Shown here: positions 11,390 through 58,511 of the stretch, piece after piece | Layout: every line of letters begins with the position of its first letter | Numbering within the stretch: the first letter of the stretch is position 1 | IMG/VR virus record: IMGVR_UViG_3300044680_000280 | Location: 186,001-250,000 of that record | Strand: one strand, 5' to 3' | Length of the DNA stretch: 64,000 nucleotides | The notes under the pieces: model-generated | The model's database searches: none | What the model was told of the DNA's origin: nothing | The model's input: the letters and a program-made list of their open reading frames with translations, nothing else | Program-made: the position numbers and the translations under genes

Positions 11390-11390
11390 T

Positions 11391-12365
11391 TCAACCCACT
11401 TCTGCCCGTGCTCGTTCCAGATAGTCCAAAGCGCTCTGCTTCACGCTATCGGCAAAGTTCAACCCCTGAATGTTTTCCTCAATACTCACGGACGGGTCAA
11501 AGGAGGCGTCGTTCTGAAGTTTGGCAATGAACTGGTCAATATCGTGGTTCTCCTTTTCCTGGCGTTCCTTCCGCTCCATATCGAACACATCCTCAGCGGG
11601 AGCGACGTTCATTGGAACCGAGATGACCTCAAACTTATCTTTGCTGAAGCACAATACGGACGCCTTAGGAGTTCGTAGAATGTTCTCGTTGATTAGGGCT
11701 CCCCGACTGAGAGCCCCCTGATTGATGAACGTTTTGTGGCCCAGTTCAACAATACCCTGATCCTTATGCCAGTGACCGAAACACCAGGCATCGGGACCGT
11801 CTCTCGTGATCAGTTGGTCGTAACGGAAAACGGGTTCATTGAAAAAGTCCTTGACCGAATCGGGAGGGTCCTTACCAGCAAGATTGTGGACGACGGCAAC
11901 GAGAAAGTCATCCCCCGGTTGCTTCTGAATACTTCTCAACTCGTCCGCTGTACGAAGAGACGAGTACGGAACGCCGACTACACGGACTCGAAGGCCACCA
12001 TCGTCGAATACCTCATCTCGCAGCCTACCGAACACCCTGGACTCGTAAAGGACTCCGAGAGGTTGGCGACCGATCGACTCAAGCTGGTTGTAGACCATGT
12101 CGTGGTTGCCCTCGACGCTAAACGTCGGGCACGGGTATGACGCATGGATCCGTGCGGTCTCCGCCACAATGGCGTGAGGGTTCTTACTGGCCGCTTTGAC
12201 GTGGAAGTAGTCCCCACCGTCAATAACCGCTCGAGCCCCGTATTCTCGGGCTATACGGCCCACGTGAGCGATGTTCGACCAAATCTCAGAGGGATAGTCC
12301 GCCTTCCACGAGACAGGGCTCCGATCTGTCAAGTGTGTGTCCGTGCGAAAGACGAAGTTGATCAA
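11391..12365 (-). CDS. SbcD/Mre11-like metallophosphoesterase nuclease
   Basis: TDTH, GGDYFH, GNHD, GHWH motifs; adjacent to Rad50-like gene. Confidence 0.88.
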   Translation of the reverse strand: MINFVFRTDTHLTDRSPVSWKADYPSEIWSNIAHVGRIAREYGARAVIDGGDYFHVKAASKNPHAIVAETARIHASYPCPTFSVEGNHDMVYNQLESIGRQPLGVLYESRVFGRLRDEVFDDGGLRVRVVGVPYSSLRTADELRSIQKQPGDDFLVAVVHNLAGKDPPDSVKDFFNEPVFRYDQLITRDGPDAWCFGHWHKDQGIVELGHKTFINQGALSRGALINENILRTPKASVLCFSKDKFEVISVPMNVAPAEDVFDMERKERQEKENHDIDQFIAKLQNDASFDPSVSIEENIQGLNFADSVKQSALDYLERARAEVG

Positions 12366-13606: not shown

Positions 13607-13608
13607 GG

Positions 13609-14976: not shown

Positions 14977-15625
14977 AACTCTTCTCCACTTGCGAAAATC
15001 TGAAAAATCGATCGTTCTCTTTGAATAGGGTTCCGCATTTAACGGTCTCCCCGGCTCGGTCACCCTTTTTGTAAGTGTGCGTACGAAGGAATGTGTGTAG
15101 CTCCGAGGGCATTAGGTCGGACTCCTTCAGAAGCCCGCGGTCTAGCTCCCAGAAGCGGGCAGCAAACCTGGCAACGTGATATGCGTCGGCCTCATCATGA
15201 TTGAATCGCCCCCTAAAGGAGGAGTCGACTCTGGCGGCTTGAACCATATCCCCTTTACCCATCTTCCCCTTGCGGATACTCCCATCCATTTTGGCAAGGG
15301 ATTTCAGGGTCGACGGGTCGAAATAAACAACATCCTTTCTGTGCTTGTACACGGTCTCGTTGACCATTACAAAGAGCCCAAAAGCGCCTGGAGAGAAGGA
15401 CTCTCCAAAGATCGGAGACTCCATGCCGACTGCCTCAATCTCGGGTCGCTCGTCCAGTACTTGGCCAACGAAGTCGCGGAGTCTCATGTAGCGTTCGACA
15501 AAGATCTCCCGCGGACTCGTCGATTGCCGACCCTTAAGAACGATTCTCCCAGGGCCAGCAACCGACGAATTGTGGATGCACCAGCCGAAGCCGGTCAAAG
15601 AGGGGTCGAGTCCAAGTGTGATCAT
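14918..15625 (-). CDS. ruvC: RuvC-like Holliday junction resolvase
   Basis: LGLDPSLTGFG, GMESP, HDEADA. Confidence 0.8.
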   Translation of the reverse strand: MITLGLDPSLTGFGWCIHNSSVAGPGRIVLKGRQSTSPREIFVERYMRLRDFVGQVLDERPEIEAVGMESPIFGESFSPGAFGLFVMVNETVYKHRKDVVYFDPSTLKSLAKMDGSIRKGKMGKGDMVQAARVDSSFRGRFNHDEADAYHVARFAARFWELDRGLLKESDLMPSELHTFLRTHTYKKGDRAGETVKCGTLFKENDRFFRFSQVEKSYDPASRNSIEEQSQGRRKK

Positions 15626-15650
15626 GGAGACTTTCGCCCCCACTACACCG

Positions 15651-16553
15651 TCAGACAGTGTCGATGAACTCTTTGAATTCTTCCGTATCGACCGTATCCG
15701 ATGAATCGGTCGAAACACCGTCACTGCCATCTTCGAGGCCTAGCTTCTCTCGAAGCTGAGCGGTCGTGATGACCCGGTACGGGTTGATCTTCTTGTAGAA
15801 CTTGATGGCTCTCTCGAGGATCTGCTTCTTGAGGTTTTCGCTCTGAAGCCACACGGCCTTGCCGTCTGCCGACGGTTCGATTTGCTGGTACTGGTCGTCC
15901 TTGCACTCGAGGAGTAGATCCTGATTCGCAATGGACAACCCGTTCTTGCGCAGACCCGAATTGACCTTCCAAATCAAGTCGTATCTCTTCTGAGAGAAGC
16001 GCCACGGCTTGATGATCGGGTCTTTGATCCAGGACGACTTGAAGACATCCTTGTCGAGCTCCCCCTCCTTGTTGGAGGGGTAAATGAGAAGGAGAGTCAC
16101 GAAGTGCGTCTTCGCTTCCTCGATTTTGCTCCAAAGCTTGTCAGCCTCGGGCCCGTCTTTGCCCATACGGGAGATGATGTCACCGACACCCTTGCCCACA
16201 AAGTGGTGGGTGAACTTCTTGAAGTTGGGCGCATTGAGGTCGAGCTTGTCGACCTCCGTGAGCTGGTCGACGCTCTTGTTCAAGGCCGCTGCCCGGTCGG
16301 ACAGAGCCTTCTTGGCAATGGCGATCTGCTCTTCCCGTGTAGGCTGGGCCGTCTTGGCTTTCGAAGCTCGATTGCGAGCCTTGAGGATGGCAGCCTCATC
16401 CACACTCTGAAACAGGAGGATGGCTACGCGGTCCGTCCTGTTTTTGGTTCCCTTGTACCAGTCGACGTCGTTGTCTGACTTTGCGGCTTTTCGATCTTCG
16501 TCGTCGAGCCCAAGACTGGAGTCCAAGTCATCATACTCGTATTCGTCACTCAT
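15651..16553 (-). CDS. putative single-stranded DNA-binding protein (gp32-like)
   Basis: Acidic termini, size and position in the recombination cluster. Confidence 0.55.
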   Translation of the reverse strand: MSDEYEYDDLDSSLGLDDEDRKAAKSDNDVDWYKGTKNRTDRVAILLFQSVDEAAILKARNRASKAKTAQPTREEQIAIAKKALSDRAAALNKSVDQLTEVDKLDLNAPNFKKFTHHFVGKGVGDIISRMGKDGPEADKLWSKIEEAKTHFVTLLLIYPSNKEGELDKDVFKSSWIKDPIIKPWRFSQKRYDLIWKVNSGLRKNGLSIANQDLLLECKDDQYQQIEPSADGKAVWLQSENLKKQILERAIKFYKKINPYRVITTAQLREKLGLEDGSDGVSTDSSDTVDTEEFKEFIDTV

Positions 16554-16672
16554 AACTGCTCTCCTTAGTTTCTCCGATTCCGACAGGTAGTGTCCAATTC
16601 AGGACTGGGTCGGTTCAGAGGTTTTTGTTTTGAGAATGTCGGTGCTATACACCGACGCCTTTAACTGTCTAC

Positions 16673-17560
16673 TCAAAGAGTATTGAGAAAATCTGCGAGC
16701 TCGTCGTCCTCGTTGGGGGTGCCTTCCTCGGTTTTAGGTTCAGAGTCAGATTGGGCAAGAAATGCGCTAAATTCGTCGTCCTCAGAAAGCTTCTCGACCT
16801 CAGCGGGAACCTCCACAATGGGGGTCGCGTCCTGGGGGCGCCACCCATTCCGCTTGGGCATCGATACCCCGTGGGTCTCTGATCTTTTCCGCCAATTGTC
16901 GGTAACAATCTCCGCCACAATCACGTCCGCTTCTTGGGGTTCGGAGGACACCGTTAACTGCTTAGGCTCCGGTTCTACCTCTTCTGGAAGGCCTTCGACC
17001 ATCAACTGGGCGATGTCGTCATCACTCAACTGCTGCCGTGGTCGACGCCCCTCTTTGACCTCACCCAAGCTCGGACGCTCATCCCCGTACATGGCTCCGG
17101 TCTCGTACTCATCCCGAATCAAACCCCGCTGGGTCTGAATCTCTCGCATCGTGTCCTTGAGCTCACGGTGACGTAGTTTCACCATGTCCTCAACGTGCTC
17201 AAGATCGAGCTTGTCATTCTCAAGGGTGACGATCTCCCGATGCTCATCCTTGAGCATCAAGTTGACTTGAGCCTCCCTATCCTTGATGTTTGGAAGATTG
17301 CGAACCGCAAGGTTCTTTGCCAAGTACTCATCAGCGACGACCTTGAATAAGGCCTGTTTGCGCCGCAGCTCCACGTCAATCACCATCTTGGCACGGCGAA
17401 CCTCATTCAGGAGATTGACCACATTGTTCGTGTAATTTCGACACGTGGCAATCATGTTCTGAAGATATGTCGGACCGAGTACCACGGGGTCGCTGGCGAG
17501 TTCGATTTCAAGCTTATCGCAGGCATCCAGGATCGCCTTCATCCTGTCTTGGGTCATCAT
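16673..17560 (-). CDS. coiled-coil protein with acidic tail, possible recombination mediator
   Basis: Long helical N-half, acidic C-terminus, next to SSB. Confidence 0.45.
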   Translation of the reverse strand: MMTQDRMKAILDACDKLEIELASDPVVLGPTYLQNMIATCRNYTNNVVNLLNEVRRAKMVIDVELRRKQALFKVVADEYLAKNLAVRNLPNIKDREAQVNLMLKDEHREIVTLENDKLDLEHVEDMVKLRHRELKDTMREIQTQRGLIRDEYETGAMYGDERPSLGEVKEGRRPRQQLSDDDIAQLMVEGLPEEVEPEPKQLTVSSEPQEADVIVAEIVTDNWRKRSETHGVSMPKRNGWRPQDATPIVEVPAEVEKLSEDDEFSAFLAQSDSEPKTEEGTPNEDDELADFLNTL

Positions 17561-38738: not shown

Positions 38739-39104
38739 TAGTGGACCCGCCGAGAATTGAACTCGGGTCCGAAAGATCGTCCTGATCACCCTCGTTACGT
38801 GCGTAGTCGGCTTGAGGCAACCGACGGCCTTGCGGGAAATGGGTGAGTTGACCCGCGTCTCAGCAACCTAATGTGTCCCCAGCTCACCGATTGCGAGGTG
38901 GCTGTATGCCTCGTGTGGGTTGACGACCCGTTGTCCGATACTCGAAGTCCTCTCGGACGGGTCGCCGATCAGGCCGCGATGGCGAGATCGGGGATGCCGT
39001 TGTCGTTGGCTGGTGTTTTCGCCTCGATTTGATTAAGCCGGGTCGAAGGAGCCCGCCTACACGCAGATGGTCGTTCTGTTCCTCCGTCGAAACCTGTCAG
39101 GCCC
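38739..39104 (-). ncRNA. ssrA: tmRNA, tag (A)ANDNGIPDLAIAA
   Basis: 5' GGGCCTGACAGGTTTCGAC; tag ORF ANDN...LAIAA*; 3' T arm and G3:U70 Ala acceptor. Confidence 0.93.
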
Positions 39105-42212: not shown

Positions 42213-42288
42213 TAGCCTCCACGCCGTGAGTCGAACACGGTGCAGCATCCTTCGCACGGATGAGCCAGGAATCCGCCTGGACGTGGAG
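42213..42288 (-). tRNA. tRNA-Arg(GCG)
   Basis: CATCC-GTGCGAA-GGATG anticodon arm. Confidence 0.75.
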
Positions 42289-42978: not shown

Positions 42979-43050
42979 TGGTGTCTCTGCCCGAAGTCGA
43001 ATCGGGTAGCCAACCTTCGGAGAGTCGGCGCGGGATCCGCCCGCAGAGAC
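42979..43050 (-). tRNA. tRNA-Arg(CCG), reduced D arm
   Basis: Loop CTCCGAA, CCA. Confidence 0.72.
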
Positions 43051-47689: not shown

Positions 47690-48337
47690 CTACGACATGG
47701 TATCTATTCGTGCAAGCTCGGTCGTGAGTATCTGATGTAAGGATTTGGCCCTCTCCTTCCAGTAGGCGTGGAATGTATCGTCCACCGGTTGTGCAATACC
47801 GGCAGGTACAGACTGACGATAGGGACTTCCATTTCTATCATCTGTAACCCACTTCCATATATGGCGAGTGTCTCGCTCCACAAAAGGGACTCCAGAGATG
47901 GCGGATATTAGAGGGTGCACATCCGTACCAGTCATAGACGGTGTCTTAGCAAGCTGCGAGGCTACCGCCCTGATCGACAGCTCGAAATCGAGCACAAGGC
48001 TACTAGTCCTTAAAACCAAATCAGAAAAACGCTTCAATGGATCTATGCCGTGTGTGTGGAGGCACATACCATAATGGAATAGATCGTCCGTGTTCCCGAC
48101 GCCGCCATCCTCGCCCAAAATTATTTTCGTGGCGATGGGTCCAGCGAGACACACTATAGCCTCCTGCACCACAGTCTCGACGTCCTCCAAATGCAGGTAC
48201 TCCGGGAGAATAGGGAGGAGTGGTACGGTCCTGGGAGGCGAAAGGGCAACGAATACGCCCTCTAAGAGTGCCCCGTAAGCGTGATACGCAACCGCGTGCC
48301 CCGCCTCATGCACACAAATGGCCTCTAGTGAAATCAC
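47690..48337 (-). CDS. M41-like HEXXH metallopeptidase domain protein
   Basis: HEAGHAV, LAGPIA, GNTDD. Confidence 0.7.
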   Translation of the reverse strand: MISLEAICVHEAGHAVAYHAYGALLEGVFVALSPPRTVPLLPILPEYLHLEDVETVVQEAIVCLAGPIATKIILGEDGGVGNTDDLFHYGMCLHTHGIDPLKRFSDLVLRTSSLVLDFELSIRAVASQLAKTPSMTGTDVHPLISAISGVPFVERDTRHIWKWVTDDRNGSPYRQSVPAGIAQPVDDTFHAYWKERAKSLHQILTTELARIDTMS

Positions 48338-49190: not shown

Positions 49191-49395
49191 CTGAGTGTGA
49201 TTCCTTCTACACCAGACGTTCCGATAGAAAGAAAATTGTGGGCTGGAAAGGTTGGCCTAACCCTCCTTACGGCTCGGCGATCTACCGAGAGCCCTTCGTG
49301 TTCACCCTCACCAGTCGGTCAAGTACCAGTGAGTTTGCGATTCCTCTCATCTCTCCAATGGTCCACCGAAGCGAAAGCTTGAAGTGAGAGGACGG

Positions 49396-49521
49396 CGCCC
49401 GGTTTCCGATTCGAACGGAAAGCTTGTGCGGACTGTCGAAGAGCCCCTTTTTATGGGGGCGAGGAACAGACCTGGGTATCTCTAAACCAAAGAGGTGGGG
49501 AACCATTCCCCTATACCGGGC
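49396..49521 (-). ncRNA. tRNA-mimic RNA 1 with large variable-arm module
   Basis: GCCCGGT/ACCGGGC acceptor, D hairpin, TTCCG-TTCGAAT-CGGAA T arm, conserved insert. Confidence 0.7.
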
Positions 49522-49572
49522 ATAATTACTGCATCGTGACATCTCTGGGGTACGTGCACTATATCATGAAGG

Positions 49573-49989
49573 TTACATCCTAACCTTTCGTGTCTTCATG
49601 GCATGACAAAGTACACAAAGCAACTGTAAGTTGGTCATCGAGTTATTAGTCCGATCTCCGTCTATGTGATCAGCATCTAGTAGTGCCACAGGTACAAGGA
49701 TCCCTGCGATTCGCAGTTTGCACTGTGGACTTGCACACTCATTGGGCAAGTTCTGTAGCGCGAGCCTTCGGTACCCAATCGAGTTTCCATGTACAAAACG
49801 ACCGTGCTCTGGACCTGAGTGATAGACCTTATAGTTAAGATTATTGTATGTGTTCCGGCACGTTGTGTCGCAAAACACGTTTTGCGTTTTGCGTTTCTTT
49901 CTGCGCAACTGTGACACTAACGTACGGACCGGCTTACCGCACTGAGCGCATGGCAACACTATCGGAGGTAGTCTTTTACGTACTGACAC
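49573..49989 (-). CDS. HNH endonuclease with N-terminal zinc finger
   Basis: CAQCGK..FCDTTC; DHIDGDRTNN..NLQLLC..CH. Confidence 0.88.
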   Translation of the reverse strand: MSVRKRLPPIVLPCAQCGKPVRTLVSQLRRKKRKTQNVFCDTTCRNTYNNLNYKVYHSGPEHGRFVHGNSIGYRRLALQNLPNECASPQCKLRIAGILVPVALLDADHIDGDRTNNSMTNLQLLCVLCHAMKTRKVRM

Positions 49990-50030
49990 AGGGAAAGTAA
50001 GGGAATACGTTCGAGGTGTAGGGCGGAGTT

Positions 50031-50107
50031 TGGTTGCAATGGCGGGATTTGAACCCGCTACTTCCGGCTTCCAAGGCTGGCGCTCTATCCTGATGAGCTA
50101 CGTTGCG
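50031..50107 (-). tRNA. tRNA-Pro(TGG)-like with C1:A72 mismatch
   Basis: Loop CTTGGAA, T arm, CCA. Confidence 0.7.
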
Positions 50108-50138
50108 TGTGCGACCTACGAATTGAACGTTTTCCCAG

Positions 50139-50267
50139 GGCCGGGTGATGGATTCGAACCATCCGAGCGTGTGGACACCCATGGTGACTCCCGTCTGAGG
50201 GGAGCGAGGTTGGAAGTCGGTTATGATTCCCTATTGAGAGGAAGCGGGACCCAAGTCCCTACCCGGC
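50139..50267 (-). ncRNA. tRNA-mimic RNA 2 with large variable-arm module
   Basis: GCCGGGT/ACCCGGC acceptor, GGGAC/GTCCC D arm, GATGG-TTCGAAT-CCATC T arm. Confidence 0.7.
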
Positions 50268-50323
50268 ATACGATGACGAACTTCAAGGCGTCGTACTGTG
50301 CCTTCCCCTGATGGGGAAAATTT

Positions 50324-50470
50324 CCCTTCCGCGTTCGAGTAGCTATGGCTGAAATTGCTTTGTTCGTTTTGCAGACGAATGCCTTACCACTTGGCGACAA
50401 TCCCCAATGGGGATCGATGGGATTCGAACCCACGAATGCTTGTGAGCCACAACAGAGAAACGCGAGAAGG
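50324..50470 (-). ncRNA. circularly permuted tRNA mimic (YrlA/Y-RNA-like)
   Basis: Order T arm, closed acceptor CGATCCCC-ATT-GGGGATTG, D arm, GCA anticodon arm; enclosed by long terminal stems. Confidence 0.75.
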
Positions 50471-50473
50471 TAG

Positions 50474-50613
50474 AGGGGAGTCCTGGATTCGAACCAGGTG
50501 AGCTTGTAGGAGCTACGAGGGTCCCTTTCTAGGGGGACGAGGTGCAGCGCCGGAATTTTGCCGAAGAAGGCATCTGATTTTTGGTCAGACTGGGACCCAG
50601 TCCCAAACTCCCC
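50474..50613 (-). ncRNA. tRNA-mimic RNA 3 with large variable-arm module
   Basis: GGGGAGT/ACTCCCC acceptor, GGGAC/GTCCC D arm, CCTGG-TTCGAAT-CCAGG T arm. Confidence 0.7.
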
Positions 50614-50670
50614 ATATGTGCTGTAAGGGATCCAGTATTCTTCCTGGTATATCTCCCCTAAGCCCGAGTC

Positions 50671-50699
50671 AATCTACATTGCTTCCCCCGAATCGTCAA
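50671..50699 (-). promoter_or_regulatory. sigma70-type promoter for the tRNA-mimic cluster
   Basis: TTGACG-N17-TAGATT. Confidence 0.6.
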
Positions 50700-50717
50700 G
50701 CCGAAAAGTGAACTTTT

Positions 50718-51293
50718 TCAAATGACGAGAAGGCTCGAGGGACTGATGCTGTACCCGACCTTCTTGCCCTTGGTCAAAAACACCTTGGCCGCGTGGGCGA
50801 GATAGGACGAAACGATGGAGATGAACGGAAGGTGCTCCCCGTCCTCGCAGGTTGCCCCGCCGACAGAGCCCTCATCGTCGATGACGAATGACTCGTCCCA
50901 GACGACCCGGCCGAACTCACCGTTAGCGGAAAGAGCTCCGTGCAAGCACGGGATGCCCTGCTTGCGAACGTAGCCCTGAATGATCCGGCGACCTTCCCCG
51001 TTGTCGAGGCAATCGACAACAAGACTCGAACCCCCGAGGAGCGCATGAACGTTGTCGGCGATGAGCTTATTTGGGTTTTGCTCGATCTTGCGAGCGAAGA
51101 GAAAATGCATCGTCTGCGCGAGAGACTGAACCTTCAGCTTGCCGACGCTCGACTTGCCGTGGAACTGGCTCTGCGTGTTCTTCTGCTCCACGCGATCCAT
51201 GTCGATGACGAGAAGAGTCGCGTCCACGTTTCGAAGAAGCTGGACGGCGTGGGACCCGAGAGCCCCAACGCCGACGATGGTGACGCGCCCCAT
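50718..51293 (-). CDS. ThiF/E1-like adenylating enzyme
   Basis: IVGVGALGS, DMDRVEQKN..SQ, VVDCLDN, candidate catalytic ATCE. Confidence 0.88.
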   Translation of the reverse strand: MGRVTIVGVGALGSHAVQLLRNVDATLLVIDMDRVEQKNTQSQFHGKSSVGKLKVQSLAQTMHFLFARKIEQNPNKLIADNVHALLGGSSLVVDCLDNGEGRRIIQGYVRKQGIPCLHGALSANGEFGRVVWDESFVIDDEGSVGGATCEDGEHLPFISIVSSYLAHAAKVFLTKGKKVGYSISPSSLLVI

Positions 51294-51294
51294 C

Positions 51295-51582
51295 TCAGAC
51301 GGAGCCGAAGGGGGTTTTCGGTCGGAGATGGATGAGCTGAAAGGGCCGAACGTCGTTCGGAGCGAAACGGTCAACGACGTAGTCGGTGAAGTTTGCGTTC
51401 GCGTCGGCATTGATCCCCGGGACGGTGCCCGTGCGGACCGCTTCCGAGACGAGCCGCCTGACTTCCGTGTCCGACGAATCGAACGGAATCGGAGATACGA
51501 GGTCTCCCGTCTGACCTGCCCACGTCACGTTGACGCGCGCCTCGTGTGCGAGCACTTCCTGGTAAACTTGAACTTGGTCCAT
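51295..51582 (-). CDS. ubiquitin-like (beta-grasp) protein
   Basis: 95 aa between JAB and E1; C-terminus LRPKTPFG-SV. Confidence 0.65.
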   Translation of the reverse strand: MDQVQVYQEVLAHEARVNVTWAGQTGDLVSPIPFDSSDTEVRRLVSEAVRTGTVPGINADANANFTDYVVDRFAPNDVRPFQLIHLRPKTPFGSV

Positions 51583-51600
51583 GGTCTTTCTCCTCTCATC

Positions 51601-51990
51601 TCATTGCCCGCGTTGCTGCGAGCGAAGTCGTAGTTCGTCGATCCACGTGTACCGTAGAGATTCACGCGGAGAGAATATCGTGTAGTCGTAAGGTCCGGGA
51701 CCTTCCCACCGTGCGAGTATGTACCGATCCGCACTGGTAATCCACCAAAAAAGGCGGATGCCGAGACCGAGTTCCACGGCCGAAAAAGTTGTGAGGTCCG
51801 TCCCCGACGGTTCGGGGATCCCGCTGCCAGGATGACTGTGCGCGAAACCCGAAAGGTTGTGCCGGTTTTCCCAGAGCACATCCCAAAGGTCGCGGCTGTC
51901 GGCAAGATGAGTCGGTCCTCGGTCTAAAGGCTCGTGCCAATAGATCGGTTTCCTATCGAGATCGACAACAACGCCCGCTTCAATAGACAT
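51601..51990 (-). CDS. JAB/JAMM metallo-isopeptidase
   Basis: N-terminal Glu (IEAG) and HSHP...PSGTD. Confidence 0.85.
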   Translation of the reverse strand: MSIEAGVVVDLDRKPIYWHEPLDRGPTHLADSRDLWDVLWENRHNLSGFAHSHPGSGIPEPSGTDLTTFSAVELGLGIRLFWWITSADRYILARWEGPGPYDYTIFSPRESLRYTWIDELRLRSQQRGQ

Positions 51991-52032
51991 GGCACGCTTC
52001 TTTCATTCGTCGTCAAGTCATCTCACTCCCCG

Positions 52033-52950
52033 TCAACGAAAGACGACGAGAACTCCCAGAGCTTGAGCCTCCAAGATTACACCGGGAAGTGATTCGAGCG
52101 TAAAGAGGCGGTCGTTCTCTCGCCCAGCGAGGCAGACGCCCGCGTCAACGATCCGTAGGTTCATGTCGCAGACACACTCGAATCGTCGGGCGGAAAGACG
52201 AAATGTAACGATCATCTCCCCACGGTTCGTGCTGTTGTGATGGTCCAGGTATTCAGCTCCCCCGACGGCAAGAGCGGAACGAGCTGCCTCCCCGAAGTCG
52301 AGCCGTGCCGCCTCGCGGCGACCGACCGAGCTTCCGAGCTGGCCAAAAATCCTCTGACGTTCTTCCTCACGTACTCGACGCTCTTCTTCCTCTCGAGCGA
52401 TACGAGCAAGTTCTTCGCGGCGCCTCTGGGCTTCGAGCCGCTGGTAGACCGCCATGCGAAAGGAGGCATCCAACGCAGGTGGAACCCCACGAATGTTGTC
52501 CACAGACGTGATCCCGTCCTGAAAAGCGCGGTTGACGTCATCCTCGAGACCAAGGGGCATCTCCTGGTTGGCGTAAATGAGTGATCCGTCCTCGTACATA
52601 CGACCCACTCGAACACGAGCAAAACGATCGAGCCCGAGTTCGATCAGATGAACCTGCTCTGACTGACGGGCAATGTCCTCGGGAGATGGGTTGCACGGAG
52701 CATCGTCTACCACGAAGCGATCTCCAACAAGGTATCCCGTGTAGGTCTTACCGAGTACCTCGGGAGATGGATCGCACGGACCATCGATCCGGGCCTCTCG
52801 GTTCTTCAACCGAAAACGAAACCACCCAAACTCCCGAGGCAGTCGACCCTGAATGTTCCACGTACGAGCGTTGAGGCGGAGGACCCGTCCACCGACCCAA
52901 GGCGAGACGAGAGTCTCATCCTCAGTTTGCAGTAGGTCTTTCCACCCCAT
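52033..52950 (-). CDS. putative E2-like protein with coiled-coil linker
   Basis: C-terminal IVDAGVCL resembles the E2 G-x-V/I-C-L active site; operon context. Confidence 0.5.
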   Translation of the reverse strand: MGWKDLLQTEDETLVSPWVGGRVLRLNARTWNIQGRLPREFGWFRFRLKNREARIDGPCDPSPEVLGKTYTGYLVGDRFVVDDAPCNPSPEDIARQSEQVHLIELGLDRFARVRVGRMYEDGSLIYANQEMPLGLEDDVNRAFQDGITSVDNIRGVPPALDASFRMAVYQRLEAQRRREELARIAREEEERRVREEERQRIFGQLGSSVGRREAARLDFGEAARSALAVGGAEYLDHHNSTNRGEMIVTFRLSARRFECVCDMNLRIVDAGVCLAGRENDRLFTLESLPGVILEAQALGVLVVFR

Positions 52951-52968
52951 TTTCGCACCCCTGTCGAC

Positions 52969-54834
52969 TCAGGAAGCCCAAACGGGCTTCTCGAGTAGTT
53001 TTGTACGCAAAATTTCGTCAATCAGTGTCACACGAACGACAGGGGTCGACCGTGTTGTTTGTCCGACCGGCGTCGAGCTGACGAGAGCTCGAATCGTACG
53101 AGGAATCGCGTACGGATCCGCAAAGATCCGTTCGTCGATCATGAGACACGGAATTCCGAGAGCCGCGGCCGCACTCGTAATGGCCCCGTAGTTCTCTCCC
53201 GGCACTTCCAGCCACCCGAAGGCGACAGGATTGATGCCCGTGGTTCGAACGGCCGAAACGAACTTCGTCACGTCGCGCTCCCCACCGTCGCCGACGAAAA
53301 GGAAAATGGCATCCTCGTCAGCCCCGGGCTTCAGGTCGTTGAGCACTCGAACGCCCTCCGAGTGCAAGGTGCCGCCGTTTGCCCTGATGTTGAGGAAGGC
53401 GTTCTCGACGCCCGCCGTCGACGGATGACGAATGGTTACGATTCGTCCGACCGTGTTGAAGACCACGACGTGCAGTTTTTCGAGGGGAAACCCCTGAAGA
53501 AACCGACTGATGTAGGTCTTCGCGACCTGGATCGAAGTGTGCATCGATCCAGAGATGTCGACAATGACGTAGATGACGAGGCCCTTGACCGCCGCTGCGA
53601 CTTCACGTTGAAGCGCCTGGTCGGACGCCTCGACGAGCTTCTCAGCAACCTCTCTCGACTTGACGCGGAGGGCAATGTTCGCCGCCCTCATGTCCGTCGC
53701 CGTCTTCATCGCCTGCTCCCAACGAGCCTTGACCGTGGAGTCCTCGAGCAGTCCGAGCTCCTCGATCGTCGGAGTCAAGATACGAATGTCCTTGTCGGAC
53801 AAAGATCCGGCCTCGATGGAAGCCGCCATGATGGCGCGCGTGATGCCCATCTTCGGGGGAACGAGACCGCAGATGCGCTTGTAGTCGGGTCGATCCTTGA
53901 GGATGCGTTGGCAAATCTCGACTTCCGTCAGACCCTCCCACGATTCAGCGGGAGCAACATCCTGCCCGATGCGCATGACGCGGCGACCGTCCTTCGCCTG
54001 AGCCTGCTTCCAGCGAAGGATCTCGAAGAACGATGGCTTGGCGGGACGGTACCCGACGCGCCGAGCGAGCTCCATGACCGTTCGACGGTAGCCCTTTTTG
54101 ACGAGGCCCTGAAGGAGCTTCGGGTTTTCCTCGCGATAGAGCAGCCACTTGGTGACCGCCTTCTCCCAACGACCGAGGAAGGGAGTCCGCGCCGACTTGC
54201 CGAACCCAAGCTCACGGTTAATCGCCGCGACCTGGGGAAGCGTGAGGATCTCGTAGATGCGAACGAGGTCCTTGGCTCGGAGCGCGTGCTCGTCCTTGCT
54301 CGAGTACGTCAGAAGCATCGCCTCACCGACGTCCCGGAAATCTTCGTCGTGGAAGAGAACCTTCCCACCGTCGACGATCGGGTCACCCTTACGGTTTTGG
54401 ACGAGCATGAACGCCGCGAGGATGTCCTTGAGGTCGCGGTGCTCCTTGGTGAACTGGTAGCTCGCCCAACGTGCGGCGAACTCACTGTCCAGCTTCCAGA
54501 CCTCGGCGACCTGGCCATACATCCACGCAACGACCTCGGGAAAGAGCCCCGCCGGACGGTAGTGACTGACGACCTGACCGCGTTCGTTCCTGATCTCGCC
54601 GTTCTCGGCAAGGATACCGACACGAACTTTGACCGTCTTTTTGCCAGCCTTGTCGAGGCGATAAACGACCTTTTGCCCGTCTTCGACCTTGTGCGTCACG
54701 GGCTCCCAACGAACGCCGACGTTGAAGCGCGCGTCCGGAACGATTTGGCCCGGTCTGTTGTGCACCGCGTGGTCTTGGTACGTCAAAAGGGCTTGGATGA
54801 TTCGATCCGCTGCTCCCAGGTTTTCGTTGTTCAT
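52969..54834 (-). CDS. TROVE/Ro60-like helical domain plus C-terminal vWA
   Basis: vWA MIDAS DISGSM, GGT, VGDG; helical N-region with MELARRVGYRP and SWE recalling TROVE motifs. Confidence 0.6.
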   Translation of the reverse strand: MNNENLGAADRIIQALLTYQDHAVHNRPGQIVPDARFNVGVRWEPVTHKVEDGQKVVYRLDKAGKKTVKVRVGILAENGEIRNERGQVVSHYRPAGLFPEVVAWMYGQVAEVWKLDSEFAARWASYQFTKEHRDLKDILAAFMLVQNRKGDPIVDGGKVLFHDEDFRDVGEAMLLTYSSKDEHALRAKDLVRIYEILTLPQVAAINRELGFGKSARTPFLGRWEKAVTKWLLYREENPKLLQGLVKKGYRRTVMELARRVGYRPAKPSFFEILRWKQAQAKDGRRVMRIGQDVAPAESWEGLTEVEICQRILKDRPDYKRICGLVPPKMGITRAIMAASIEAGSLSDKDIRILTPTIEELGLLEDSTVKARWEQAMKTATDMRAANIALRVKSREVAEKLVEASDQALQREVAAAVKGLVIYVIVDISGSMHTSIQVAKTYISRFLQGFPLEKLHVVVFNTVGRIVTIRHPSTAGVENAFLNIRANGGTLHSEGVRVLNDLKPGADEDAIFLFVGDGGERDVTKFVSAVRTTGINPVAFGWLEVPGENYGAITSAAAALGIPCLMIDERIFADPYAIPRTIRALVSSTPVGQTTRSTPVVRVTLIDEILRTKLLEKPVWAS

Positions 54835-54939
54835 GGTTCTGATCCGATCTTCGGCGCTAGGCCGTCCTCATGGTTACACCGACCCGGTGAATGTCCAGAA
54901 GAATTTCGGGACCGAGTTGTGTCGGCGTTTACTGCAAGT

Positions 54940-55942: not shown

Positions 55943-56464
55943 ATGTTCGCGTTGTTTGCTGCGATAGGCACATTTCTGTACGGAACGCTCGCAGGGTGGG
56001 GAATTCACAAAGCAATACACCAGCGATGGGCGGGTCGATTCTACCGAGCCCATATGACACACCACGTCAAACTTTATCCTCCGCTCGACCTCGTGTCAGA
56101 AAAATACCGCAGCGCGGGCAAGGACAATTCGAACCTGGTTTTCATCCCCGCGATTACCGTCGCGTTCGCGGCACTCGAGTTCCTCATGTGGAAGATCGGC
56201 GCCTCAGTCGGCACTCTCGTCATGTTGGTGATCGAGGGCATCATCATAGGAGCACTGCACGACCTCATGCATACGTGGTTTCACTTGAGCGGAACTCGAC
56301 TGCTCAAATACGAGTGGTTCCAGAGGTTGAAGCGTTATCACTTCTACCATCATCATCACATGCAGCAAAACTTCGGAATCATCTGGTTCGGTTGGGACCG
56401 CGTATTCGGAACCTTTCGGAACCGAGGGCGGTTGGTGGGACAGACGGGAGTCGAACCCGCTTAG
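55943..56464 (+). CDS. fatty-acid hydroxylase/sterol desaturase-family membrane protein
   Basis: His boxes HKAIH, HMTHH, HDLMHTWFH, HFYHH; NFG...WDRVFGT. Confidence 0.85.
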   Translation: MFALFAAIGTFLYGTLAGWGIHKAIHQRWAGRFYRAHMTHHVKLYPPLDLVSEKYRSAGKDNSNLVFIPAITVAFAALEFLMWKIGASVGTLVMLVIEGIIIGALHDLMHTWFHLSGTRLLKYEWFQRLKRYHFYHHHHMQQNFGIIWFGWDRVFGTFRNRGRLVGQTGVEPA

Positions 56465-57015: not shown

Positions 57016-57639
57016 ATGAGGCTAAGAAATTGGTGGCGGCTGGTCCGCACCGTAGTGGCATTGAACGTGCTTGCGTGCCGTCCAGCTCAAGCTCCGGACT
57101 ACAATCATCAGTTCAGAAGGTTCGTCATCTACGTCGACAACGCCCTCCCCCTCAAGTGGATCAAGAAGGGTGCCGACGATTGGACAAGGGTCACGGGAGA
57201 CGTCTTCACGCTCGTTCCAACCGAGCACGAAAAGGCGATGGTGCTCTCCCTCTCAACGTGGTCCAGCGACATTCTGGTCATGGTCGACGCCAGCGAACTA
57301 GATGGTGCAATCTGCGAACCGTCGAACCTCGCGTGCTTCACGAGAAGTACGGTTTACATGTTCCCGGACAGGATCATGAAAGATCATCCGTCGCACCCGT
57401 ACTTAGGCTCCCGTTACTACGGCGCCGGCGCGAACAACGGAACATGGTCTCAGGTTCCGGCACACGAAATCGGCCACTTCCTCGGACTGGACCACATCGA
57501 AACCCGACCATCGGTCATGGGCCCCAACACGGGCGTCTCAACCGAAGCCCCAACCGAAGAAGACGGGGCACTTGTCATACAAAAGAGGTTGCATCCTCCG
57601 AAAGTGGCTCAACGCGTCATCGTAGTAAGCCAACCGTAG
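57016..57639 (+). CDS. matrixin-like (metzincin) metallopeptidase lipoprotein
   Basis: Lipobox VLAC; HEIGHFLGLDH plus Met-turn SVM. Confidence 0.85.
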   Translation: MRLRNWWRLVRTVVALNVLACRPAQAPDYNHQFRRFVIYVDNALPLKWIKKGADDWTRVTGDVFTLVPTEHEKAMVLSLSTWSSDILVMVDASELDGAICEPSNLACFTRSTVYMFPDRIMKDHPSHPYLGSRYYGAGANNGTWSQVPAHEIGHFLGLDHIETRPSVMGPNTGVSTEAPTEEDGALVIQKRLHPPKVAQRVIVVSQP

Positions 57640-57718: not shown

Positions 57719-57793
57719 TAGTGACCCCACGGGGAGTTGAACCCGCGATTGTCCGGTTGAGAACCGAGTGTCCTACCGTTAGACGATGGGGCC
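57719..57793 (-). tRNA. tRNA-Glu(CTC)
   Basis: Cloverleaf. Confidence 0.88.
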
Positions 57794-57812
57794 GTGGTGT
57801 ATCTATAAGCGT

Positions 57813-58511
57813 ATGAAAAAAGTCTACCTGGCGGGACCGGACGTTTTTTGGCCGGAACCCGAAAAGCTTGCTGGAGAAATGAAACGAATATGCCTCGATG
57901 CAGGATTCGAGGCTGTGTTCCCGCTCGACGCCACCATCACCTTTGAGAAGGATGAGTTGGGCCCGAGCAAAGCGAGAAAAATCTTCGAGGCGAACACGGC
58001 GCTCATCCGTTCTTGCCAGGGGGTCCTCGCCAACATCCAACCGTTCCGAGGTCCGTCCCTCGACGTAGGAACCGCCTGGGAAATGGGTTACGCACACGCA
58101 CTGGGAAAGCCCGTCGTTGCCTACTGGTGCGGAGAGTACGATTACAAGGACAAGGCCCTAGAATACCTTGACCTGGAAGAGAAGGACCTGAAGGACGGAA
58201 GAGACTGGGATGGGGTCCTCATCGAAGACTTTGGGCTGTCGGATAATCTCATGCCCATCTGTGGATCGTTCAAAGTGTTCGACAAACGGAGCACCGCCGT
58301 CGAGCAGATGGCCGACCTTCTGAAAAAAGAAGCTCCGTACCGATCGGCCGAAAGGGACGCGAAAGTGGCGGGTCCGAACGACCAATGCTGGATCGACCGC
58401 TACGAGATGGGAGAACCGCCGTGGTACGGACCGCCTAAGGAGCCGGATCGCATATGTGAACTCGGCACACGTGGGTGCATCATCGGTCACACGATGAAGA
58501 CGGCTACCTGA
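57813..58511 (+). CDS. nucleoside 2-deoxyribosyltransferase family protein
   Basis: VYLAGPDVF, DVGTAWEMGYAHALGKPV, NLM. Confidence 0.9.
   Translation: MKKVYLAGPDVFWPEPEKLAGEMKRICLDAGFEAVFPLDATITFEKDELGPSKARKIFEANTALIRSCQGVLANIQPFRGPSLDVGTAWEMGYAHALGKPVVAYWCGEYDYKDKALEYLDLEEKDLKDGRDWDGVLIEDFGLSDNLMPICGSFKVFDKRSTAVEQMADLLKKEAPYRSAERDAKVAGPNDQCWIDRYEMGEPPWYGPPKEPDRICELGTRGCIIGHTMKTAT

What the first reader, a model, noticed from the sequence alone, without database searches (positions are those of the whole stretch)
49230..54935. Phage locus coupling a Ro60/TROVE-like-vWA protein and a ubiquitin-like conjugation cascade to Y-like tRNA-mimic RNAs
Seen: five co-oriented, tightly spaced genes. They are a helical+vWA protein (621 aa), a protein with C-terminal DAGVCL, a JAB peptidase (E...HSH...SxxD), a 95-aa protein ending PKTPFG-SV, and a ThiF/E1 with a candidate catalytic Cys (ATCE). 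Four related tRNA-mimic RNAs follow immediately, all inside the tRNA array. Known: E1/E2/JAB/Ubl gene sets form bacterial ubiquitination-like systems (e.g. the Bil antiphage system), where a peptidase exposes the Ubl C-terminal Gly; Ro60 (TROVE+vWA) genes sit beside Y RNA genes. Inference: JAB trims the SV, E1/E2 conjugate the Ubl, and a Ro-like RNP acts as adaptor or substrate, linking protein tagging to tRNA/RNA damage or counter-defence. I do not know this combination as a described phage system.
Basis: partly seen in the sequence, partly recalled or inferred. Interest (0 to 1): 0.92.

Follow-up and report, generated by a model that had tools for sequence, protein, structure and literature searches.

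The report
Ro60-like, ubiquitin-like, tRNA-mimic RNA module
A giant phage, its relatives and some myxobacterial genomes share five genes (a Ro60-like RNA-binding protein, a ubiquitin-like tag with its trimming and activating enzymes, and one unknown protein) next to a new family of tRNA-shaped RNAs, which suggests a link between protein tagging and an RNA-protein particle that I found described in no paper.

Summary

- **Conservation:** the gene order is kept in about 55 of 59 non-redundant huge-phage loci and in most of 80 bacterial-genome loci. These are mainly Myxococcota and include complete Corallococcus chromosomes.
- **RNAs:** they form a new structured family in two circularly permuted forms. 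A has tRNA topology with a roughly 50-nt conserved variable arm. B has its ends at the arm tip and a closed acceptor stem, which is the topology of YrlA (a bacterial tRNA-like Y RNA). Covariation is strong. B sits beside the 621-aa gene even where no tRNAs are nearby.
- **JAB trimming:** loci that lack JAB encode a tag ending exactly at its conserved Gly, which supports trimming.
- **E1:** the active-site motifs and a Cys are invariant.
- **Ro60 likeness:** plausible but distant. Foldseek's best full-length hits are Ro60. The full-length profile match has 97% probability, but the N-domain alone matches weakly, and Pfam TROVE does not hit.
- **E2:** the assignment of the 305-aa protein is not supported.

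Function is inferred. No paper describing this combination was found.

The parts
52969..54834 (-). 621-aa Ro60-like protein: N-terminal beta subdomain (about aa 23-93), helical-repeat domain (about aa 99-415), C-terminal vWA domain with a complete MIDAS metal site
   Evidence: Pfam vWA hits. Invariant D426xS428xS430...T489...D516. AF2 model pLDDT 87.7. Best full-length Foldseek PDB hits are phage phiLo Ro60 and Xenopus Ro60, 515-566 aligned columns, E 1e-7 to 1e-5, TM 0.3. hhalign against a TROVE/Ro60 alignment gives 97.1% probability, E 5e-11, collinear from the DNEFAARWASYAF..HRDLK motif through the vWA domain. More than 1400 homologues at about 60% identity.
52033..52950 (-). 305-aa protein of unknown fold family: beta-rich N-domain, long helix (aa 158-206), C-terminal alpha/beta domain with invariant C259 and C273
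   Evidence: No hit in Pfam, PHROGs, PADLOC, NCBIfam or PDB sequences. AF2 pLDDT 87.8. No significant Foldseek match and no E2 among the 50 matches listed. Present in 55 of 59 viral loci, always directly after the vWA gene apart from variable inserts.
51601..51990 (-). 129-aa JAB/JAMM metallopeptidase
   Evidence: Prok-JAB 24.7 bits. H51xH53, S62 and D65 invariant, E4 nearly so. Its absence co-varies with a tag encoded ending at Gly.
51295..51582 (-). 95-aa ubiquitin-like modifier candidate ending RPKTPFG(93)-SV
   Evidence: Invariant R87, K89, F92 and near-invariant G93, followed by 0-60 variable residues. Several homologues end exactly at G. No family or PDB hit. The fold was not tested.
50718..51293 (-). 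191-aa minimal ThiF/MoeB-type E1 adenylyltransferase
   Evidence: Pfam ThiF 73 bits. PADLOC E1-E2 adenylation-domain hits. Invariant GxGxxGS, R21, D31, Q43, K54, D94, D97 and T148-C149. The ATG lies 1 nt after the preceding stop codon.
50475..50613 (-). RNA A (A-type tRNA-like RNA): 7-bp acceptor stem, D-like hairpin with a GG loop, anticodon-like hairpin, roughly 50-nt variable arm with CUCG, then YACAAGC, then the T arm
   Evidence: Descriptor scan. Model R1 scores 76 bits. Family covariation.
50325..50470 (-). RNA B (B-type): circular permutation of the A fold, with the ends at the variable-arm tip and the acceptor stem closed by an AUU loop (YrlA-like T arm, acceptor stem-loop, D arm order)
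   Evidence: Fold. Motif order. Model R2 scores 116.7 bits. Rfam tRNA matches the 5' half at 35 bits, and YrlA gives a local hit of 19.8 bits against a gathering score of 69.
50140..50267 (-). RNA C (A-type)
   Evidence: Model R1 scores 63.3 bits. Descriptor scan.
49397..49521 (-). RNA D (A-type), separated from C by tRNA-Pro(UGG) and an HNH endonuclease ORF
   Evidence: Model R1 scores 86.5 bits. Descriptor scan.

Best explanation
This is a conserved module of five proteins plus RNA, shared by a clade of uncultivated huge phages and by some bacterial chromosomes.

**Shown**
- The same gene order recurs across phages and bacteria.
- The RNAs form a structured family in two circularly permuted forms.
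- The RNAs stay next to the cassette even where there are no tRNAs.
- The JAB and E1 active sites are intact.
- Presence of JAB co-varies with a removable tail on the tag.

**Inferred**
1. The 621-aa protein is a distant Ro60-like RNA-binding protein. It holds the tRNA-like RNAs through their invariant variable arm (CCAG...CACUCGG and YACAAGC), much as Ro60 holds Y RNAs.
2. The tRNA-shaped body of the RNA (acceptor stem, T arm, GG-containing D loop) stays free to engage tRNA-handling factors. In the B form the closed acceptor stem, often followed by an encoded CCA, may be opened by RNase P and 3' processing.
3. JAB removes the residues after Gly93 of the 95-aa tag. The minimal E1 then adenylates that Gly and probably takes it onto Cys149.
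4. The tag is passed to a lysine of a target, either directly (E2-independent, as in archaeal SAMP or Thermus TtuB conjugation) or via the two invariant cysteines of the 305-aa protein. Likely targets are a component of the RNA-protein particle or a protein that binds it. The vWA MIDAS site is a candidate docking point for the tag.
5. The likely role is control or protection of the tRNA and translation pool during infection. In bacteria it would be an RNA-stress or conflict module.
For: - **Gene order:** conserved in viral loci and in genome loci, including Corallococcus complete chromosomes. No other protein family is conserved within 8 kb either side.
- **A-type RNA:** 105 strong hits, all on the cassette strand. 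70 lie downstream of ThiF, and where any do, the first lies a median of 150 nt after the ThiF stop codon (31 loci).
- **Covariation:** 90.4% of cells are paired, against 54% in shuffles and 40-51% in slid controls. All six helices show compensatory changes.
- **B-type RNA:** about 39 strong hits in viral loci. B has the same motifs as A in circularly permuted order.
- **RNA next to the vWA gene without tRNAs:** seen in six divergent loci with no canonical tRNA within 8 kb.
- **Reverse test:** in a motif-seeded sample, true RNA hits fall only in cassette-bearing contigs or in loci too short to judge.
- **Ro60 likeness:**
- **Tag, JAB and E1:** tag signature. JAB and tail covariation, p = 7e-6. 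Catalytic residues invariant.
- **Precedent:** phage Ro60 with adjacent Y-like RNAs is known (PMC12135203, PMC4201824).
Against: - Pfam TROVE does not match the protein or its distant relatives.
- The N-domain-only profile match is weak: 8.6% probability, P = 0.004.
- Foldseek TM-scores are only about 0.3. vWA-only hits reach E-values one to two orders of magnitude weaker than the Ro60 hits.
- No E2 fold was found, so the transfer route is unknown.
- The tag ends in a single Gly after Phe, not Gly-Gly, and its fold is untested.
- The E1 is minimal and has no separate Cys domain.
- JAB-less variants exist, so deconjugation is not essential.
- About half of the genome loci show no RNA hit at the thresholds used, although many of these loci are short.
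- There are no expression, binding or conjugation data of any kind.
Confidence: 0.5

Rival explanations
1. Sulfur-relay pathway. The 95-aa protein is a sulfur carrier rather than a protein tag. JAB exposes its Gly, E1 adenylates it, and it is converted to a thiocarboxylate. The invariant cysteines of E1 and the 305-aa protein would relay persulfide. The sulfur is then used to thiolate the tRNA-like RNAs or the phage's tRNAs, for example in the T loop or at the wobble position.
For: - The E1 is a minimal ThiF/MoeB type. Its best NCBIfam hits are ThiF, the SAMP-activating E1 and MoeB.
- No E2 fold was found.
- The module always sits with tRNA-like RNAs and often inside tRNA arrays.
- From established knowledge: TtuB/TtuC thiolate tRNA in Thermus, Urm1/Uba4 and SAMP2/UbaA serve wobble thiolation, and QbsD (a JAMM peptidase) trims QbsE before sulfur loading.
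- JAB-less variants with a ready-made Gly end fit a carrier that needs no deconjugation.
Against: - No PP-loop thiolase, rhodanese or cysteine desulfurase is conserved within 8 kb either side.
- The C-terminus is Phe-Gly, not the Gly-Gly of known sulfur carriers.
- This model does not explain the Ro60-like vWA protein.
- Long tails, some resembling zinc ribbons, on certain homologues look more like modifier precursors.
Confidence: 0.2
2. A Bil/CBASS-like ubiquitination-type conflict system, for defence in bacteria and counter-defence or exclusion in phages. It would act only on proteins. On this view the neighbouring RNAs are merely odd tRNA genes that travel with tRNA arrays.
For: - E1, JAB and a Gly-ended tag are the core parts of known bacterial systems (PMC10557695, PMC10097602). 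PADLOC E1-E2 models match the E1.
- The cassette occurs in both phages and bacterial chromosomes, as conflict systems often do.
Against: - The RNAs stay next to the vWA gene in loci with no canonical tRNA within 8 kb.
- The RNAs are found only with the cassette in a motif-seeded sample.
- PADLOC finds no model for three of the five proteins.
- No E2 fold was found.
- About 60% identity across more than 1400 homologues looks like a core gene rather than a fast-evolving defence gene.
Confidence: 0.1
3. The RNAs are precursors of working tRNAs. The A form carries an intron-like insert in the variable arm, and the B form is a circularly permuted tRNA gene. The cassette proteins would help mature, charge or use them.
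For: - The B form has the layout of permuted tRNA genes: the 3' half lies upstream of the 5' half, and about 10 of 21 B-type elements inspected by eye have N-CCA right after the acceptor 3' strand (PMC3978253 for the known kind).
- Many anticodon-like loops are 7 nt with U33 and a purine at position 37.
- The 5' half of RNA B scores 35 bits on the Rfam tRNA model, with a GCA anticodon loop.
Against: - The 'insert' carries the most conserved nucleotides of the whole RNA (CUCG, YACAAGC). This argues that it is functional, not spliced out.
- Anticodon-like triplets differ between B-type elements of different phages, and several loops lack U33.
- A-type D arms are non-canonical: a 5-bp stem with a 3-5 nt loop.
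- No splicing endonuclease or RNA ligase is conserved nearby.
Confidence: 0.1

Closest known systems
Ro60 (Rsr) with Y RNA / YrlA particles, including phage versions (Thermus phage phiLo phiRo60 with Yrl1/Yrl2; mycobacteriophages)
   Same: - A helical-repeat domain followed by a MIDAS vWA domain.
- The best full-length structural matches are Ro60.
- One or more small tRNA-mimic RNA genes lie directly beside the protein gene.
- The B form has the YrlA order of T arm, closed acceptor stem-loop, D arm, with the 5' and 3' ends paired in a long stem.
- A 7-bp acceptor stem, as in the M. smegmatis YrlA that RNase P cleaves (PMC4201824).
   Different: - Pfam TROVE does not match, and the YrlA model scores 19.8 against a gathering score of 69.
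- The protein has an extra N-terminal beta subdomain.
- The terminal stem leaves the RNA at the variable-arm position, and an anticodon-like arm is kept.
- The GNCGAA motif is absent. The conserved motifs are CACUCGG and YACAAGC.
- A second, non-permuted form (A) exists.
- The module is always linked to E1, the tag and the 305-aa protein, and usually to JAB, which is not known for Ro60.
Bacterial ubiquitination-like systems (Bil BilABCD; CBASS Cap2/Cap3; Bub)
   Same: - An E1 adenylating enzyme with a conserved Cys.
- A JAB peptidase.
- A small protein whose conserved C-terminal Gly is exposed by trimming.
- All encoded in one operon.
   Different: - No recognisable E2.
- The E1 is only 191 aa and has no E2 fusion or Cys domain.
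- PADLOC models do not cover the tag, the 305-aa protein or the vWA protein.
- The system is linked to a Ro60-like protein and to structured RNAs.
E2-independent Ubl systems that also carry sulfur (archaeal SAMP/UbaA with HvJAMM1; Thermus TtuB/TtuC; QbsE/QbsC/QbsD)
   Same: - A minimal ThiF/MoeB-like E1, a JAMM peptidase and a small Gly-ended protein.
- A functional tie to tRNA in the TtuB, SAMP2 and Urm1 cases.
- JAMM trimming of extra C-terminal residues in the QbsE case.
   Different: - The tag ends Phe-Gly, not Gly-Gly.
- No thiolase or sulfurtransferase partner is conserved nearby.
- The vWA protein and the 305-aa protein have no counterpart.
Circularly permuted tRNA genes (red alga Cyanidioschyzon, some archaea) and two-piece tmRNA from permuted genes
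   Same: - In the B form the T arm and acceptor 3' strand lie upstream of the acceptor 5' strand, D arm and anticodon arm, joined by a short linker that often begins N-CCA.
   Different: - This is a bacterial and phage setting with no splicing endonuclease conserved next to the cassette.
- The break lies at the tip of a large conserved variable arm.
- Permuted and unpermuted forms coexist in one array.
- The anticodon is not conserved.

Membership tests
Ro60 / TROVE family | TROVE domain detectable by the Pfam model PF05731 | tested here: not met
   No TROVE hit for the window protein at E up to 0.1, nor for 10 distant relatives at E up to 0.01. As a positive control, phiLo Ro60 gives 28 bits with the same tool.
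Ro60 / TROVE family | Profile-level homology to bona fide TROVE/Ro60 proteins across the helical domain | tested here: inconclusive
   Full-length hhalign gives 97.1% probability, E 5e-11, over 340 collinear columns from the D..F.A..A.YA..R motif into the vWA domain. The N-domain alone gives only 8.6% probability, P = 0.004, over 49 columns.
Ro60 / TROVE family | Helical-repeat ring followed by a C-terminal vWA domain with a MIDAS site | tested here: inconclusive
   The vWA domain and a complete MIDAS site are met. The best full-length Foldseek PDB hits are Ro60 structures over 515-566 columns, but the TM-score is about 0.3. A closed ring could not be checked.
Ro60 / TROVE family | A Y-RNA-like gene next to the protein gene | tested here: met
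   B-type RNA lies within a few hundred nt of the cassette in viral loci. It sits directly beside the vWA gene in divergent genome loci that lack tRNAs.
Ro60 / TROVE family | Binds the RNA stem and misfolded RNA | not testable with these tools
   Needs RIP-seq, EMSA or a structure.
Rfam YrlA (RF02553) | Score at or above the gathering threshold of 69 bits | tested here: not met
   Best score is 19.8 bits, E 0.35. It is a local match to the T arm, acceptor stem-loop and D arm of RNA B only.
Rfam YrlA (RF02553) | Order of T arm, closed acceptor-like stem-loop, D arm, with the ends paired in a stem | tested here: met
   Seen in the fold and consensus structure of the B-type and in the alignment to the YrlA model.
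Canonical tRNA | Detected by ARAGORN or by the Rfam tRNA model over its full length | tested here: not met
   ARAGORN finds none of A to D. Rfam tRNA matches only the 5' half of B (35 bits), with the T arm missing from the match. A 7-bp acceptor stem and a T arm are present.
Circularly permuted tRNA genes | 3' half upstream of 5' half, joined across the acceptor ends | tested here: met
   B-type layout is found in at least 20 viral loci. About 10 of 21 B-type elements inspected by eye have N-CCA after the acceptor 3' strand.
Circularly permuted tRNA genes | Bulge-helix-bulge junction processed by a splicing endonuclease and a ligase | not tested
   No bulge-helix-bulge search was run. No endonuclease or ligase is conserved within 8 kb either side.
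Bacterial ubiquitination-like systems (Bil, CBASS Cap2/Cap3, Bub) | E1 adenylation domain with a catalytic Cys | tested here: met
   ThiF scores 73 bits. PADLOC E1-E2 models match at E 3e-13. The nucleotide-binding residues and C149 are invariant. Catalysis itself is inferred.
Bacterial ubiquitination-like systems (Bil, CBASS Cap2/Cap3, Bub) | E2 with a UBC fold | tested here: not met
   The AF2 model of the 305-aa protein (pLDDT 87.8) has no Foldseek PDB hit below E 0.26 and no E2 among the 50 matches listed. There are no Prok-E2 Pfam hits in 54 members. A minimal E2-like topology for aa 219-303 cannot be excluded.
Bacterial ubiquitination-like systems (Bil, CBASS Cap2/Cap3, Bub) | JAB/JAMM peptidase that exposes or releases the tag's C-terminal Gly | tested here: met
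   The JAMM motif is invariant. Loss of JAB co-varies with a tag encoded ending at Gly, p = 7e-6. Cleavage itself is inferred.
Bacterial ubiquitination-like systems (Bil, CBASS Cap2/Cap3, Bub) | Tag with a beta-grasp fold | not tested
There is no Pfam or PDB sequence hit. The sequence pattern is compatible, but that is not a test.
Sulfur-carrier Ubls (ThiS, MoaD, TtuB, QbsE) | C-terminal Gly-Gly and a partner sulfurtransferase or thiolase | tested here: not met
   The conserved end is Pro-Phe-Gly. No such partner is conserved within 8 kb either side.
PRTRC (ParB-related, ThiF-related cassette) | NCBIfam PRTRC models at their cutoffs | tested here: not met
   PRTRC_ThiF scores 26 bits against a cutoff of 145. 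No other PRTRC model matches.

The most novel reading that the evidence does not exclude
The ubiquitin-like chemistry may be aimed at, or guided by, the RNA. One version is that the tRNA-mimic particle acts as bait, so that proteins that grab tRNAs (for example host tRNA-cutting defence nucleases) are tagged by the E1-activated 95-aa protein. A more radical version is that the activated Gly carboxylate is transferred to the 3' CCA end of the tRNA-like RNA, as an amino acid is to a tRNA. Either would be the first RNA-guided or RNA-linked ubiquitin-like tagging system. The natural pair of circularly permuted RNAs would present the same fold with different free ends.
Probability: 0.12. Interest if true: 0.95.

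Novelty: new variant of a known kind. Interest (0 to 1): 0.8.

Why it matters
**A possible new link.** Ro60 with Y RNA particles and bacterial ubiquitin-like systems are both active research fields, and I know of no reported link between them. Here they are welded into one module that has stayed together from huge phages to myxobacterial chromosomes. This points to a functional link between RNA surveillance or tRNA mimicry and protein tagging.

**A new RNA family.** The RNA family is new to Rfam. It is strongly supported by covariation and exists naturally in two circularly permuted forms. That is a rare natural experiment on which ends of an RNA fold matter.

**It can be tested at the bench.** The module also occurs in cultured Corallococcus strains, so the questions can be addressed without culturing the phages.

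**Relevance to huge phages.** It may also bear on why huge phages carry large tRNA arrays, and on how they cope with host defences aimed at tRNAs.

Tried and rejected
**Searches that found nothing**
- Sequence searches of the 305-aa and 95-aa proteins found no match in Pfam, PHROGs, PADLOC or NCBIfam (single proteins). Every family member scanned singly against Pfam and family profiles against PDB sequences also gave nothing.
- A profile of the N-domain against 1.84 billion representative proteins found only the family itself and shorter relatives. None of the 10 tested carries Pfam TROVE.
- blastn and tblastn against 50,697 deposited phage genomes found only Virus Rctr197k.
- Rfam finds only tRNAs and a tmRNA in the window. 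None of the four RNAs belongs to another Rfam family.

**Tests with little power**
- Single-sequence folding of the RNA regions gave weak z-scores (0.07 to -2.2). Comparative analysis was needed.
- The first related-loci run with a single protein returned only the window's own contig. An alignment query was needed.
- Promoter and terminator scans were no better than chance.
- An exact DNA motif (CACAAGC...GGTTCGANTCC) proved unspecific on its own. Most matches are in small phages and are not this RNA.
- CCA encoding did not distinguish the RNAs from tRNAs: 22% against 35%.
- The Corallococcus neighbourhood gave no clear prophage or function clues.

**Ideas rejected**
- PRTRC membership.
- A tail-assembly JAB/Ubl pair like lambda K and I. 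There was only a weak PHROG hit, and the cassette lies in tRNA arrays and in bacterial chromosomes.

Full report
**1. What is in the window**

The window is part of an uncultivated huge phage. The 621-aa protein is seen on a contig of up to 463 kb, and the locus matches IMG/VR contig IMGVR_UViG_3300044680_000280 of 407 kb.

From about 32 to 60 kb the minus strand carries 37 tRNA genes and a tmRNA. The finding lies inside this array. Five minus-strand ORFs occupy 50718-54834, with gaps of 1-42 nt.

The ThiF gene starts at the ATG at 51293, one base after the preceding stop codon. It therefore encodes 191 aa, not the 230-aa ORF listed mechanically.

**2. The proteins**

*The 621-aa protein*
- It has a C-terminal vWA domain (Pfam scores just under the cutoff) with a complete, invariant MIDAS metal site.
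- A confident AF2 model (pLDDT 87.7) shows a small beta subdomain, about 17 helices, then the vWA domain.
- The best full-length Foldseek PDB hits are Ro60 structures: Thermus phage phiLo Ro60 (9KOP, 9L5Y) and Xenopus/human Ro60 (1YVP, 2I91, 9NFA). They align over 515-566 columns with E 1e-7 to 1e-5.
- TM-scores are only about 0.3, and vWA-only hits reach E values of about 3e-6 and weaker.
- In BFVD the best hits are viral proteins of about 500-540 aa with the same layout, including DUF2828 proteins.
- Pfam TROVE does not match. It also fails on 10 distant relatives taken from a profile search of 1.84 billion proteins.
- To test homology directly I located the real phiLo Ro60 gene (TROVE 28 bits), collected TROVE proteins and aligned 33 of them.
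- hhalign of the full-length family against this set gives 97.1% probability and E 5e-11. The 340 collinear columns begin at the motif DNEFAARWASYAF..HRDLK, aligned to DPxFVAxLAxYAR...LRS.
- The N-domain alone gives only 8.6% probability and P = 0.004, for that motif.
- I conclude the protein is plausibly a very distant Ro60 relative (my estimate is about 65-70%). It is not a demonstrated member.

*The 305-aa protein*
- It has no family anywhere.
- Its model (pLDDT 87.8) has a beta-rich N-domain, a long helix and a small C-terminal alpha/beta domain with invariant C259 and C273.
- Foldseek finds nothing below E 0.26, and no E2 appears among the 50 matches listed. The weak hits scatter over S1/KH/cold-shock modules and dsRBDs.

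*The JAB protein*
- H51xH53, S62 and D65 are invariant.

*The ThiF protein*
- All nucleotide-binding residues and T148-C149 are invariant.

*The 95-aa protein*
- R87, K89 and F92 are invariant and G93 is nearly so (...RPKTPFG), followed by 0 to about 60 unconserved residues. Some tails resemble zinc ribbons. Several homologues stop exactly at the Gly.

**3. A comparative test of JAB trimming**

- In 12 bacterial-genome loci the JAB gene is missing from its slot. The gap between the 305-aa gene and the tag gene is 50-290 nt, too short for a JAB gene.
- In 11 of these 12, the tag is encoded ending at ...PFG-stop.
- Where JAB is present, only 6 of 35 end at the Gly.
- Fisher's exact test gives p = 7e-6, or 2e-7 when the viral loci are added.
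- From their tag sequences and the organisms they come from, the JAB-less loci appear to belong to at least three lineages, so this is not a single event. The loci are not fully independent.
- This is the strongest evidence that JAB removes the tail to expose the Gly.

**4. Conservation of the module**

- An alignment-seeded scan of IMG/VR returned 66 loci, mostly on contigs of 100-600 kb.
- tblastn shows the order vWA, 305-aa, JAB, tag, ThiF on one strand in nearly all of them, at 40-65% identity and with variable inserts.
- Clustering all plus-strand ORFs shows that only these five families are conserved within 8 kb either side. They occur in 59, 55, 54, 53 and 46 of 59 loci, and the next family occurs in 10.
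- Among deposited phage genomes only Virus Rctr197k has the cassette.
- A scan of one genome per species returned 80 loci. Most are Myxococcota assemblies from metagenomes (Kofleriaceae, Polyangia, Archangium). There are also isolates: the Corallococcus exercitus SDU142 and C. coralloides KYC2213 complete chromosomes, and Paraliomyxa miuraensis. Verrucomicrobiota and a Leptonemataceae chromosome also appear.
- The five-gene order holds there as well, at 25-60% identity.
- The 53-57% identity group may be phage contigs binned with their hosts, which would point to Myxococcota as hosts. That is an inference.

**5. The RNAs**

*Discovery*
- Reading the minus strand after ThiF shows four T-arm motifs (GGTTCGAATCC) outside any predicted tRNA.
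- A descriptor for a T arm plus a 7-bp acceptor pairing finds A, C and D as 125-139 nt tRNA-like elements.
- The same descriptor finds 64 such elements in the related loci, all on the cassette strand.

*A-type architecture*
- A 7-bp acceptor stem.
- A D-like hairpin with a 5-bp stem and a 3-5 nt loop containing GG.
- An anticodon-like hairpin with a 7-nt loop.
- A variable arm of about 50 nt, made of an outer stem, an internal loop with invariant CUCG and an inner hairpin.
- Invariant YACAAGC, then the T arm.

*A-type model*
- A covariance model (R1) finds 105 strong hits in 1.06 Mb, all on the cassette strand.
- 70 lie downstream of ThiF. In the 31 loci that have such hits, the first lies a median of 150 nt after the ThiF stop codon. 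Another 29 lie just upstream of the vWA gene.
- On the 130-sequence alignment, 90.4% of cells are paired, against 54% in shuffles and 40-51% when partners are slid. The covariation score is 0.79 against 0.18. All six helices carry compensatory changes.
- The alignment was fitted to the model, which inflates these numbers somewhat. An independent MAFFT/RNAalifold analysis already showed covariation in the variable arm, which played no part in the selection.

*B-type*
- RNA B has the same motifs in circularly permuted order. From 5' to 3' these are: the inner-hairpin 3' strand, the outer-stem 3' strand, CACAAGC, the T arm, the acceptor 3' strand, a short loop, the acceptor 5' strand, a canonical D arm, an anticodon arm, the outer-stem 5' strand, (A)CUCG, and the inner-hairpin 5' strand.
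- The break is at the tip of the variable arm, and the acceptor stem is closed.
- In about 10 of 21 B-type elements inspected by eye, the linker starts N-CCA.
- A second model (R2) finds about 39 full-length B-type RNAs in the viral loci, all on the cassette strand. RNA B scores 116.7 bits.
- The order of T arm, acceptor stem-loop and D arm with paired ends is the topology described for YrlA (PMC4201824). The Rfam YrlA model aligns to exactly that core, but at 19.8 bits against a gathering score of 69.
- The RNAs are therefore Y-like in layout, not members of the Rfam family.

**6. The link between the RNAs and the cassette**

- In the divergent genome loci (36-42% identity), B-type RNAs lie directly before or after the vWA gene.
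- This holds in loci that have no canonical tRNA within 8 kb: Corallococcus, L130, L133 and L102.
- ACAyGC, GGUUCGAnUCC and CACUCGG are all retained there.
- In the reverse direction, 80 viral loci were seeded only by a loose DNA motif. True model hits occurred only in cassette-bearing contigs, or in two loci too short to judge.

**7. Interpretation**

*Shown*
- The module and its conservation.
- The RNA family, its structure and its two permuted forms.
- The adjacency of the RNAs to the cassette.
- Intact JAB and E1 active sites.
- The covariation between JAB and the tail.

*Inferred*
- That the Ro60-like protein binds the conserved variable arm.
- That the tag is conjugated rather than used as a sulfur carrier.
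- The role of the 305-aa protein.
- The biological purpose.

I favour a Ro60-like particle coupled to E2-independent or non-canonical tagging (confidence 0.5). A sulfur-relay reading is the main rival (0.2). Its precedents are TtuB/TtuC, SAMP2/UbaA and QbsE/QbsD, cited from established knowledge.

Phage Ro60 with adjacent Y-like RNAs is already known (PMC12135203, PMC4201824, PMC7824862). Bacterial E1/JAB/Ubl systems are also known (PMC1779556, PMC10557695, PMC10097602). Four full-text searches found no paper describing the two together, or these RNAs.

**8. Verdict**

The tag, JAB, E1 and the RNAs stand. The Ro60 likeness is plausible. The E2 assignment is not supported.
- The system is a new variant that combines two known kinds, together with a new RNA family.
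- Interest is high, because the link is unexpected and can be tested in cultured Corallococcus.

Noticed in passing
window 49573-49989 (-): A 138-aa HNH endonuclease ORF (Pfam HNH_3 and HNH, below cutoff) sits between tRNA-Pro and RNA D. tblastn finds only weak HNH matches (32-46% identity, partial) elsewhere in a few related loci and none at this position, so it looks like a homing-endonuclease insertion into the RNA array.
   Followed up: partly
window 42983-43050 and 42217-42288 (-): Two tRNA-sized elements (68 and 72 nt) have a perfect 7-bp acceptor pairing and a T arm. Neither ARAGORN nor Rfam at gathering score reports them. They may be divergent tRNAs.
   Followed up: no
window 38739-39104 (-): A phage-encoded tmRNA (Rfam 96.7 bits) with the tag peptide ANDNGIPDLAIAA lies inside the tRNA array.
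   Followed up: no
window 55943-56464, 57016-57639, 57786-58511 (+): Three plus-strand genes are embedded in the minus-strand tRNA array: a fatty-acid-hydroxylase-like membrane protein, a matrixin-like zinc peptidase (HEIGHxxGLxH), and a nucleoside 2-deoxyribosyltransferase (107 bits).
   Followed up: partly
window 47690-48337 (-): A 215-aa ORF with an HEAGH zinc-protease-like motif has no Pfam match and no homologue in the related loci.
   Followed up: partly
L020:7103-7420, L031:14248-14568, L021:16099-16473, L049:14157-14537: In some phages the tag carries a long C-terminal tail with CxxC...H or C motifs (for example CPNCGQVHE). This recalls ubiquitin fused to zinc-ribbon ribosomal proteins in eukaryotes.
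   Followed up: no
3' flanks of the 105 A-type RNAs (for example window 50473, 50138, 49395): Position 74, the base after the discriminator, is C in about 89% of A-type RNAs, although a full CCA is encoded in only 22%. The reason is unknown, and canonical tRNAs were not checked for the same bias.
   Followed up: partly
L001 (KX853510.1 184234-186183): In Virus Rctr197k the Ro60-like gene is annotated only as a misc_feature ('similar to conserved hypothetical protein'). tblastn shows one unbroken 56%-identity match over the whole protein. The cassette genes there are spread over 9 kb with many small inserted ORFs.
   Followed up: partly
L123, L127, L128 (Corallococcus chromosomes), about 11100-17100: In Corallococcus about 6 kb is inserted between JAB and the tag plus ThiF pair. 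The insert includes an oppositely oriented GMC oxidoreductase. The vWA homologue there matches only from residue 96, that is, without the query's N-terminal beta subdomain.
   Followed up: partly
window 50671-50699 (-): A sigma-70-like site (TTGACG, 17 nt, TAGATT) lies between the ThiF stop codon and RNA A. It is not above chance in the scan, and its conservation in other loci was not checked.
   Followed up: no
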